DNA of 49,712 nt from Octopus bimaculoides (lineage: Eukaryota). Within the stretch, counting starts at the first letter, position 1. Each line of letters opens with the position of its first letter. Location of the stretch: contig NC_068991.1 in NCBI RefSeq assembly GCF_001194135.2, forward strand, positions 21,589,125 through 21,638,836, read 5' to 3'. The translations under genes were made by a program, and so were the position numbers. Below, in pieces: positions 34,847 to 34,915 of the stretch. The notes below the pieces were generated by a model. The model saw only the letters and a list, made by a program, of their open reading frames with translations. It made no database searches and was not told where the DNA came from.

Positions 34847-34915
34847 GTCCATCTCCAGAAATACAAGAATCTTCCATAGCAAGAGTCCGAAGACAATCTG
34901 ATTCCTCCCCTAAAT
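34847..34915 (+). CDS. Exon 6: last DSL Cys plus Ser/Pro linker with RVRR furin-type site
   Basis: CTAAC branch-like motif, polypyrimidine tract, cacag| acceptor, T|gtaag donor, 69 nt, phase 1-1. The T|GT junction supplies the 6th DSL cysteine: (C)PSPEIQESSIARVRRQSDSSPK(S). Confidence 0.7.

What the first reader, a model, noticed from the sequence alone, without database searches (positions are those of the whole stretch)
34847..34915. DOS region apparently replaced by a 22-aa linker carrying an RVRR furin site: candidate shed, soluble C2-DSL fragment
Seen: the DSL exon ends TAC-T| and this exon starts |GT, completing the sixth DSL Cys. It then reads PSPEIQESSIA-RVRR-QSDSSPKSVFPP before a conventional EGF (RVRR at 34882-34893). 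Established: canonical Delta/Jagged have two atypical short EGFs (the DOS region) directly after DSL, and R-X-[KR]-R is the furin/proprotein-convertase consensus. Inference: constitutive cleavage would separate the receptor-binding C2-DSL module from the EGF stalk. That would give a diffusible DSL protein, analogous in effect to secreted nematode DSL proteins, uncoupled from endocytic pulling force. It could act as a long-range antagonist or modulator.
Basis: partly seen in the sequence, partly recalled or inferred. Interest (0 to 1): 0.8.

Follow-up and report, generated by a model that had tools for sequence, protein, structure and literature searches.

The report
Conserved furin-type site in octopus DSL protein
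A small exon in an octopus-like genome encodes a flexible linker with a conserved protease-recognition motif (RVRR). It sits between the ligand-like head and the EGF stalk of an unusual Delta-related membrane protein, so the head may be cut off, but cleavage and Notch binding are untested.

Summary
Exon 34847-34915 has good splice sites and starts with GT, which completes the sixth DSL cysteine (T|GT). It encodes PSPEIQESSIARVRRQSDSSPK and joins in frame to a conventional EGF exon at 38159.

It is the best of 55 phase-compatible candidate exons in the sequenced intron, and it already sits in an older fragmentary gene model.

The main new evidence is one intron-less transcript contig from another, unidentified species (Logan run SRR29271480). 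It encodes a collinear homologue: signal peptide, divergent C2/MNNL, DSL with identical Cys spacing, a 38-aa acidic linker with RRIRR, about 22 EGFs, a TM segment and a 27-aa tail. That mRNA has no DOS, and RIRR aligns with RVRR. In both proteins this is the only R-x-[KR]-R in the ectodomain.

DOS absence and a constrained furin-type motif are therefore supported. Cleavage, release of the head and any action on Notch remain inference. Four of the five Jagged1 DSL contact residues are not conserved, so "receptor-binding" is doubtful.

The gene is a lineage-specific DSL-only protein, not a canonical Delta that lost DOS. I rate it a new variant of a known kind, of moderate interest.

The parts
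13352..13628 (+). Exon 1: start codon region, signal peptide (MMKMRLQSVFMHFFFLSFISFQFVLTFG) and first part of the divergent MNNL/C2-like module. Ends in phase 1 (AAT G|gtaaga). The exact ATG is uncertain because other in-frame ATGs lie just upstream.
   Evidence: tblastn of the L001 N-terminus, E=7e-5; boundaries read from the sequence.
14182..14315 (+). Exon 2: middle of the C2-like module (VIFSPFPEYQNIS...IHLLIPGPIQ). The older model P0088 starts at an internal Met of this exon.
   Evidence: Collinear with L001 'APPLEQNSTS...IHLEIPGALQ'.
19075..19248 (+). Exon 3: C-terminal part of the C2-like module (PLELEISMYRQ...VVSVPLL), phase 0 to 0.
   Evidence: Present in P0088. Sequence. Aligns with L001 'PLDIRLLFYYQ'.
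21879..22011 (+). Exon 4: DSL domain, Cys1 to Cys5 plus the first base of the Cys6 codon. Donor is TAC T|gtaagt.
   Evidence: Pfam DSL 31.7 bits against a cutoff of 24.2. PDB hits to the DLL1, JAG1 and DLL4 DSL. Sequence.
34847..34915 (+). Exon 5, the finding: 69 nt, phase 1 to 1. Completes DSL Cys6 and encodes the Ser/Glu-rich linker PSPEIQESSIARVRRQSDSSPK.
   Evidence: best of 55 candidates; in model P0087; homologous to the L001 linker.
34882..34893 (+). RVRR codons (AGA GTC CGA AGA): R-x-R-R proprotein-convertase consensus. Predicted cleavage is after R255 of the model, before QSDS.
   Evidence: Aligned with RIRR (AGA ATC CGC CGA) in L001; two of the three Arg codons differ by synonymous changes. 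Only R-x-[KR]-R in either ectodomain. Shuffle test P=0.014 and 0.025.
38159..38287 (+). Exon 6: end of the linker (SVFPPDP) plus the first conventional EGF (CHSAPCKNGASC...).
   Evidence: 65% identity to L001 EGF1. Pfam EGF.
40470..40583 (+). Exon 7: EGF2.
   Evidence: 60.5% identity to L001.
42177..42526 (+). Exon 8: EGF3 to EGF5.
   Evidence: 58.5% identity to L001, E=4e-37.
47800..48023 (+). Exon 9: EGF6 and EGF7.
   Evidence: Collinear with L001 residues 455-529.
48752..49072 (+). Exon 10: EGF8 to EGF10. The gene continues beyond the window.
   Evidence: 67.6% identity to L001 residues 525-592 and onward.

Best explanation
The window holds the 5' part (10 exons, 13352-49072, + strand) of a lineage-specific, non-canonical DSL-family type I membrane protein.

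Architecture: signal peptide, fast-evolving MNNL/C2-like module, DSL domain, a 29-residue cysteine-free Ser/Glu-rich linker, then a long run of Notch-like EGF repeats. Ten EGFs lie in the window. The full-length homologue has about 22 EGFs (a Cys-pattern count), followed by a TM helix and a 27-residue tail.

Exon 34847-34915 is a constitutive coding exon. It finishes the DSL and encodes the linker. The protein has no DOS region.

The linker's RVRR is a conserved proprotein-convertase (furin-type) site. Inferred mechanism: in the trans-Golgi or at the cell surface, a PC cuts after RVRR. This separates a head of about 227 residues (C2-like plus DSL) from the membrane-anchored EGF stalk. No cysteine bridges the two parts, so the head is either released or held only non-covalently.

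Shown: the exon, the architecture, the absence of DOS, the conservation of the motif and its uniqueness in the ectodomain.

Inferred: cleavage, release of the head, and any effect on Notch.
For: - Splice sites, phases and the open frame are as claimed, and this is the best of 55 candidates.
- The exon is used in database model P0087.
- An exhaustive HMMER search with P0088 found P0096. Its contig L001 (3892 nt, Logan SRR29271480) has one continuous ORF across all positions where the window has introns, so it is an mRNA. It encodes the same order of modules. The DSL Cys spacing is identical (x8, x3, x9, x7, x8), and a 38-aa linker ...EEEEEGIRRIRRETVLNP runs straight into EGF1.
- Identity by segment: C2-like 31%, DSL 34%, EGF1-10 60%. 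In the poorly conserved linker, I-x-R-[VI]-R-R-[QE]-[ST] still aligns, with synonymous differences in two Arg codons.
- All linker arginines sit in the motif. Shuffles of each linker give R.[KR]R in 1.4% and 2.5% of trials.
- There is no other R-x-[KR]-R in either ectodomain.
- A signal peptide places the site in the secretory lumen.
- The Cys count is even on both sides of the site: 4 in the C2-like module, 6 in the DSL and 6 per EGF.
- A profile of the N-terminal module hits the C2 plus DSL of Jagged-1/2, Delta and DLL1 structures at E=4.5e-15 to 1e-12, with alignments reaching into the C2 domain.
- Precedent: OSM-11 and DOS-3 combine a PC consensus site with a TM domain and are proposed to release soluble Notch co-ligands (PMC2504490).
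Against: - There is no transcript from the window's own species. About 2.3 kb of N gaps lie between the DSL exon and this exon, and 649 nt after it. An extra or alternative exon cannot be excluded.
- Conservation rests on a single homologue of unknown species, which could be a paralogue. All three word-index searches and the exhaustive search gave no further relatives that have this linker.
- A consensus motif is not proof of cleavage. The acidic surroundings (very acidic in L001), P1' Gln/Glu and nearby Ser/Thr that may be O-glycosylated could lower or regulate cleavage.
- The AlphaFold single-sequence model was unusable (mean pLDDT 35), so linker exposure is judged from composition only.
- The DSL lacks four of the five Jagged1 Notch-contact residues and the Trp of the GW.G motif (PMC3415683). 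A Notch-directed function for the head is therefore uncertain.
Confidence: 0.55

Rival explanations
1. The exon and the DOS-less architecture are real, but RVRR is not a cleavage site. The acidic tract plus basic patch is a flexible hinge or an interaction site (for example glycosaminoglycan or partner binding, or intramolecular charge pairing). The protein acts as an intact membrane-tethered molecule.
For: Only a consensus motif and its conservation in two sequences are shown. In L001 the motif lies next to a run of 13 acidic residues, which fits a charge-pairing role. Flanking acidic residues are not typical of the best furin substrates (my own knowledge).
Against: What is kept is exactly the R-x-R-R spacing rather than general basic charge. 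Every Arg of both linkers lies in the motif. The site is lumenal, in a Cys-free low-complexity segment between folded modules, which is where PC sites usually sit.
Confidence: 0.25
2. The site is cleaved, but as a maturation step rather than shedding. Either the two chains stay associated, as in the Notch S1 heterodimer, or the C2-DSL head acts like a pro-domain whose removal activates the Notch-like EGF stalk. In that case the functional product is the stalk, not a diffusible DSL ligand.
For: The EGF stalk is the conserved part (60% identity against 31-34% for the head). It resembles Notch and fibropellin EGFs: the top hits are named fibropellin or Notch-like. The DSL has lost most Notch-contact residues. 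Furin S1 cleavage of Notch leaves a non-covalent heterodimer (established knowledge).
Against: Nothing here shows an interaction between head and stalk. The head still keeps the DSL Cys framework and the C2-like module in both species, which argues that it has a function of its own.
Confidence: 0.15
3. The exon is a prediction artefact or a minor alternative exon. In this species the true mRNA contains another exon, possibly DOS-type, hidden in an N gap.
For: Twenty N gaps interrupt the window, ten of them between 22012 and 38158. The older annotation split the gene exactly here and joined this exon to a dubious first exon next to a dispersed repeat at about 28.7 kb. No same-species transcript was available.
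Against: The homologous mRNA has no DOS and has a homologous linker with the same motif. Skipping the exon would turn Cys6 into Ser (T+CA). No DOS-like ORF exists in the sequenced intron. The exon ranks first of 55 candidates.
Confidence: 0.05

Closest known systems
DSL-only Notch ligands (vertebrate DLL3; C. elegans LAG-2, APX-1, DSL-1)
   Same: A DSL domain that is not followed by a DOS motif (Komatsu et al. 2008, PMC2504490). Like DLL3, the DSL is divergent at the Notch-contact face. DLL3 does not trans-activate Notch (PMC2171428, title and abstract only).
   Different: Here a 29-38 residue Cys-free linker separates the DSL from the EGFs. There are about 22 conventional Notch-like EGFs, against 1 to 8 in those ligands. 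The linker carries a PC motif. Orthology to any of those ligands was not shown.
C. elegans OSM-11 and DOS-3 (DOS co-ligands with a PC site plus TM)
   Same: Notch-pathway extracellular proteins made as TM precursors with a consensus proprotein-convertase site, proposed to release a soluble active fragment (PMC2504490).
   Different: Those release a DOS motif and have no DSL. Here the released part would be C2-DSL and there is no DOS. The two are not homologous in the released part.
Canonical Delta and Jagged/Serrate
   Same: The order N-terminal C2/MNNL, DSL, EGF repeats, TM. A profile of the head hits JAG1, JAG2, Delta and DLL1 structures.
   Different: No DOS. No Pfam MNNL hit. The DSL C3-C4 loop is two residues shorter and lacks RPRDD.FGH. 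There are far more EGFs. The last 282 residues of the homologue show no VWC-type domain. The tail is only 27 residues. Known shedding of canonical ligands is juxtamembrane and by ADAM proteases (my own knowledge).
MNNL-like multi-DSL proteins of unidentified source (P0089, P0090, P0093, P0094)
   Same: These are the best non-self hits of the exhaustive search (E=3e-10 to 2e-6). They share the short-loop DSL type and the C-terminal part of the C2-like module. They resemble the bivalve 'DSL tandem repeat' clade described in PMC8166818, but their source species is not known.
   Different: Those have tandem DSL domains and no EGF stalk, linker or PC motif.
Notch S1 (furin) processing
   Same: An R-x-R/K-R site in an extracellular, non-EGF segment of an EGF-repeat type I protein, cleaved in the secretory pathway (established knowledge).
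   Different: S1 lies in the juxtamembrane heterodimerisation domain and the halves stay bound. Here the site lies between the N-terminal head and the stalk, and no holding domain is evident.

Membership tests
DSL-family (Delta/Serrate/LAG-2) proteins | DSL domain with six cysteines in the characteristic spacing | tested here: met
   Pfam PF01414: 31.7 bits for the window and 34.3 bits for L001, against a cutoff of 24.2. Spacing is x8, x3, x9, x7, x8, against x8, x3, x11, x7, x8 in DLL1.
DSL-family (Delta/Serrate/LAG-2) proteins | N-terminal MNNL/C2 domain before the DSL | tested here: inconclusive
   No Pfam MNNL hit for the window or L001 protein alone. A 6-sequence family profile does align to the C2 region of JAG1 (residues 29-99 and 108-198) and DLL1 (residues 36-201) at E=1e-12 to 5e-15. 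The more canonical multi-DSL members contribute much of that signal.
Canonical DSL/DOS ligands (Delta, DLL1, Jagged, Serrate) | DOS motif (two atypical EGFs) immediately after the DSL | tested here: not met
   The Komatsu consensus regex gives no match in the window model or in full-length L001, and matches the DLL1 control, which was written from memory. PF21700 and PF21795 stay below cutoff. The mRNA L001 goes DSL, linker, conventional EGF.
Canonical DSL/DOS ligands (Delta, DLL1, Jagged, Serrate) | Conserved Notch-binding face of the DSL (Jagged1 F199, R201, R203, D205, F207; PMC3415683) | tested here: not met
   In the PDB alignments only the F199 position is kept (F in the window, Y in L001). 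The R201, R203 and D205 positions read D, T, H in the window, and F207 falls in a 2-residue deletion.
Jagged/Serrate subfamily | Juxtamembrane cysteine-rich/VWC domain after about 16 EGFs | tested here: not met
   The last 282 residues of the L001 protein give only EGF-type Pfam hits, then a TM segment (protein 3). The window ends before this region.
Type I membrane DSL ligand | Signal peptide, single TM helix and cytoplasmic tail | tested here: inconclusive
   A signal-peptide-like N-terminus is present in the window. The TM segment (LAILLSLLYGIILLIILIAFIW) and the 27-aa tail are seen only in L001, and only after repair of a 1-nt frameshift. The 3' end of the window gene lies outside the window. 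No dedicated predictor was run.
Furin/proprotein-convertase substrates | R-x-[KR]-R motif | tested here: met
   RVRR at 34882-34893 and RIRR in L001. Unique in both ectodomains.
Furin/proprotein-convertase substrates | Site is lumenal or extracellular and lies in an exposed, unstructured segment | tested here: inconclusive
   Lumenal by topology: signal peptide upstream, TM far downstream. The linker is Cys-free and rich in Ser, Glu and Pro. The structure prediction failed (pLDDT 35), so exposure is inferred from composition.
Furin/proprotein-convertase substrates | Motif conserved among orthologues | tested here: met
   Conserved in the one homologue available, with synonymous codon differences. 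Shuffle P=0.014 and 0.025. This rests on only two sequences.
Furin/proprotein-convertase substrates | Actual endoproteolysis at the site | not testable with these tools
   Needs expression with and without a PC inhibitor or a site mutation.

The most novel reading that the evidence does not exclude
Cephalopods make a membrane-anchored 'pro-ligand'. Its C2-DSL head is constitutively released by a proprotein convertase and acts at a distance as a force-independent modulator (antagonist or co-ligand) of Notch. This would be a route to soluble DSL signalling independent of the natively secreted nematode DSL proteins.
Probability: 0.15. Interest if true: 0.8.

Novelty: new variant of a known kind. 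Interest (0 to 1): 0.5.

Why it matters
Canonical Notch activation needs a membrane-tethered ligand that pulls on the receptor, and soluble ligand fragments usually inhibit. This protein would be a DSL-family member built to shed its C2-DSL head at a conserved convertase site. No precedent for a convertase site at that position turned up in the papers I searched.

If the head is shed, it would be a natural way to turn a juxtacrine module into a diffusible one, in a lineage with unusual neural and developmental complexity. Even if the head does not touch Notch, the gene defines an unannotated family: divergent C2-DSL, cleavable linker, about 22 Notch-like EGFs, TM segment and short tail.

The work also repairs a gene that the older annotation had split into fragments.

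Tried and rejected
- Word-index protein searches. The DSL-to-EGF5 model returned only generic EGF proteins. The DSL+linker+EGF1 query returned only the two self-fragments P0087 and P0088. The first 300 aa of P0096 returned nothing. No further orthologues were obtained.
- The look-up of encoding contigs for P0087 gave nothing on record.
- A 'FELKIQE' match to the DLL1 N-terminus at 11149-11169 looked like an MNNL start. I rejected it: there is no supporting context, and the true exon 1 lies at 13352-13628 by homology.
- AlphaFold2 on P0096 without an alignment gave mean pLDDT 34.9 and is unusable, so no fold search was run.
- Rfam scan of the whole window found no RNA family.
- Searches for repeats covering the exon found none; only microsatellites flank it.
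- Cluster look-ups gave no organism names for P0096 or for the nearest relatives. The run accession appears in no searchable paper.
- Literature searches found no precedent for a PC site between the DSL and the EGFs of a Notch ligand.
- Pseudogene reading rejected: all ten exons are open, have consensus splice sites and are collinear with an expressed homologue.

Full report
**1. Observation**

The window is eukaryotic and octopus-like. It is rich in microsatellites and has 20 N gaps totalling 7,776 N.

The DSL exon ends ...AAT GAA TAC T|gtaagt at 22011. At 34847 a strong polypyrimidine acceptor (ttttattctcttcacag) precedes GT CCA TCT ... CCT AAA T|gtaaga. Joining the two gives TGT, the sixth DSL cysteine. 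The exon then reads PSPEIQESSIARVRRQSDSSPK, with RVRR at 34882-34893. It ends in phase 1 and joins CA GTG TTT... at 38159. This gives S-VFPPDP followed by a conventional EGF, CHSAPCKNGASCWRTSNGTSFTCECQIDYTGMLC. The only adjustment is that the Cys-to-Cys linker is 29 residues, not 22.

**2. Is it more than chance?**

I listed every open, phase 1-to-1 exon candidate in the sequenced part of 22012-38158 that starts with G[TC]. There are 55. The 34847-34915 candidate scores best on a simple acceptor-plus-donor score, 6.4 against 3.2 for the runner-up. The exon is not part of a repeat, and nothing in Rfam matches anywhere in the window.

A database search with DSL+linker+EGF1 found only two proteins, both 100% identical fragments of older gene models:
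- P0088 ends at the DSL exon.
- P0087 contains this exon spliced to EGF1. It is preceded by a doubtful first exon at about 28.76-28.85 kb that lies beside a dispersed repeat.

So the earlier annotation used the exon but broke the gene exactly at this point.

**3. The decisive relative**

An exhaustive HMMER search of 1.84 billion representative proteins with P0088 gave 15 hits. One of them, P0096 (626 aa), matches across the C2 tail and the DSL. It comes from a single Logan contig, L001, of run SRR29271480, 3,892 nt long.

L001 is an mRNA-type contig. A continuous reading frame crosses all the positions where the window has introns, and short UTRs flank it. One T is missing from a T-run at about nt 1914. 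Adding it gives a 1,193-aa protein with these parts:
- a signal peptide;
- a divergent cysteine-containing N-terminal module;
- a DSL;
- a 38-aa linker, DSNLFEEGSLGPDNEEADEKEEEEEGIRRIRRETVLNP;
- 22 EGF repeats by a Cys-pattern count;
- a TM helix;
- the 27-aa tail TRKKRKGPRDFCFEIPFNRYYHIPDLM.

The window exons are collinear with it, and no EGF is missing. Identities run from 47.6% for EGF6-7 to 58-68% for the other EGF exons. Identity by segment is C2-like 31%, DSL 34%, linker 7 of 21 aligned residues, and EGF1-10 60%. The DSL cysteine spacing is identical in the two proteins: x8, x3, x9, x7, x8.

Using L001 as a guide, I located the missing 5' exons of the window gene: 13352-13628, 14182-14315 and 19075-19248. 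All are open with consensus splice sites, so the gene is intact and not a pseudogene.

**4. Absence of DOS**

The published DOS consensus (Komatsu et al. 2008, PMC2504490) matches my DLL1 control sequence, which I wrote from memory. It matches nothing in the window model or in the full-length homologue. The Pfam models for the atypical Delta/Jagged EGFs (PF21700, PF21795) stay below cutoff. A tblastn search with the DLL1 DOS region finds only the conventional EGFs in the window.

Because the homologue's mature mRNA runs DSL, linker, EGF1, a DOS exon hidden in the N gaps is now unlikely. An alternative exon in this species cannot be formally excluded. Skipping exon 34847-34915 would keep the frame but replace Cys6 with Ser, so the exon is expected to be constitutive.

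**5. The basic motif**

RVRR aligns with RIRR. The local pattern is I-x-R-[VI]-R-R-[QE]-[ST], inside linkers that otherwise differ in length and sequence. Two of the three Arg codons differ by synonymous changes: CGA against CGC, and AGA against CGA. All arginines of both linkers lie in the motif.

Shuffling each linker produces R.[KR]R in only 1.4% and 2.5% of trials. It is the only R-x-[KR]-R in either ectodomain; the other one in L001 is the cytoplasmic stop-transfer RKKR.

The site is lumenal, sits in a Cys-free Ser/Glu/Pro-rich segment between folded modules, and matches R-x-R-R with P1' Gln or Glu. That is the setting in which furin-type convertases act (established knowledge). The cysteine count is even on each side, so no disulfide should hold the two parts together after cleavage. 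The head would be about 227 residues.

**6. What kind of protein this is**

A profile of the N-terminal module was built from the window protein, L001 and four relatives (alignment A1). It hits the C2 plus DSL part of solved Jagged-1/2, Delta, DLL1 and DLL4 structures at E=4.5e-15 to 1e-12. The alignments reach into the C2 domain. The single sequences get no Pfam MNNL hit, so 'C2-DSL' is reasonable but very divergent.

The nearest relatives are not canonical Delta or Jagged. They are MNNL-like proteins with tandem short-loop DSL domains (P0089, P0090, P0093, P0094). Their source species is unknown. They resemble the bivalve 'DSL tandem repeat' clade that a survey of lophotrochozoan Notch genes describes as rapidly diverging (PMC8166818).

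The residues of the Jagged1 DSL that form the Notch-binding face are F199, R201, R203, D205 and F207 (PMC3415683). Here they are mostly lost. Only the F199 position is kept, and the loop is two residues shorter. The Trp of the GW.G motif is also gone in both the window protein and L001.

With about 22 EGFs, no VWC-type domain in the last 282 residues and a 27-residue tail, the protein is neither Delta nor Jagged. It belongs to the known class of 'DSL-only' proteins (DLL3, LAG-2; PMC2504490) but is a new variant of it.

**7. Mechanism and rivals**

Best-supported reading (0.55): a real linker exon carrying a functional PC site that separates head from stalk.

Rivals:
- The motif is a hinge or interaction patch and is not cut (0.25).
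- It is cut, but as a maturation step, with the halves staying together or the head acting as a pro-domain for the better-conserved, Notch-like stalk (0.15).
- The exon is an artefact or there is a hidden exon (0.05).

I put it at about 0.15. A partial precedent exists: OSM-11 and DOS-3 combine a PC consensus site with a TM domain and are proposed to release soluble Notch co-ligands (PMC2504490). I found no report of a PC site between the DSL and the EGFs of any ligand.

**8. Limits**

- Only one homologue is available. Its species is unknown and it could be a paralogue.
- There is no same-species transcript.
- The structure prediction was unusable.
- Signal peptide and TM segment were judged by eye.
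- The furin assessment is by consensus only.

**9. Verdict**

I rate it a new variant of a known kind, interest 0.5.

Noticed in passing
window 13352-22011: The 5' exons of the gene (signal peptide and C2-like module) are all in the window. The older gene model P0088 misses exon 1 and starts at an internal Met of exon 2, and the annotation splits one gene into at least two fragments (P0088, P0087).
   Followed up: yes
L001 about nt 1896-1925: The homologous transcript contig has a 1-nt shortfall in a T-run (GTGTTTTTTGTC). This shifts the frame after EGF9, so the called protein P0096 ends in 34 junk residues. The downstream frame stays open for 555 codons with intact EGFs and a TM segment. It is probably an assembly or sequencing error. 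If real, it would give a truncated secreted form.
   Followed up: partly
window 22009-22070: Reading through the DSL exon donor (intron retention) would add CKYHFYYSYCFGLKSFIRKK and then a stop. That would directly encode a secreted C2-DSL protein. There is no evidence that this isoform exists.
   Followed up: no
window whole gene against L001: The ligand-like head evolves much faster than the stalk: 31-34% identity for C2-like and DSL, against 60% for EGF1-10. This is the reverse of what one expects if the head carried a conserved receptor-binding function.
   Followed up: partly
window about 4700-6900 (+): A degenerate, frame-shifted non-LTR retrotransposon lies upstream of the gene. Pfam gives Exo_endo_phos_2 (endonuclease-reverse transcriptase) below cutoff and RVT_1 at 48 bits.
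   Followed up: yes
window 28317-28451 (-), 29491-29625 (-), 37767-37925 (+): Three copies of a dispersed repeat (ORF 'KLHEALAGDGGEPCCTLPPQLSLTLTSCFCCACNSKGQPCHTVSC') sit in the two introns that flank the linker exon. The doubtful first exon of model P0087 (about 28757-28848) lies beside one copy.
   Followed up: no
window 48075-48497 (-) and many other sites: His/Cys-rich pseudo-ORFs and long CVCV or YIYI 'ORFs' are translations of microsatellites (CAT/CAC, TG, TA repeats) in introns. They are not genes.
   Followed up: no
window 34894-34915 and L001 linker: Ser/Thr residues lie immediately after the basic motif (QSDSSPKS in the window, ETV in L001), and the linker contains S-x-E motifs. O-glycosylation or secretory-pathway phosphorylation could regulate cleavage. 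This is pure speculation from the sequence.
   Followed up: no
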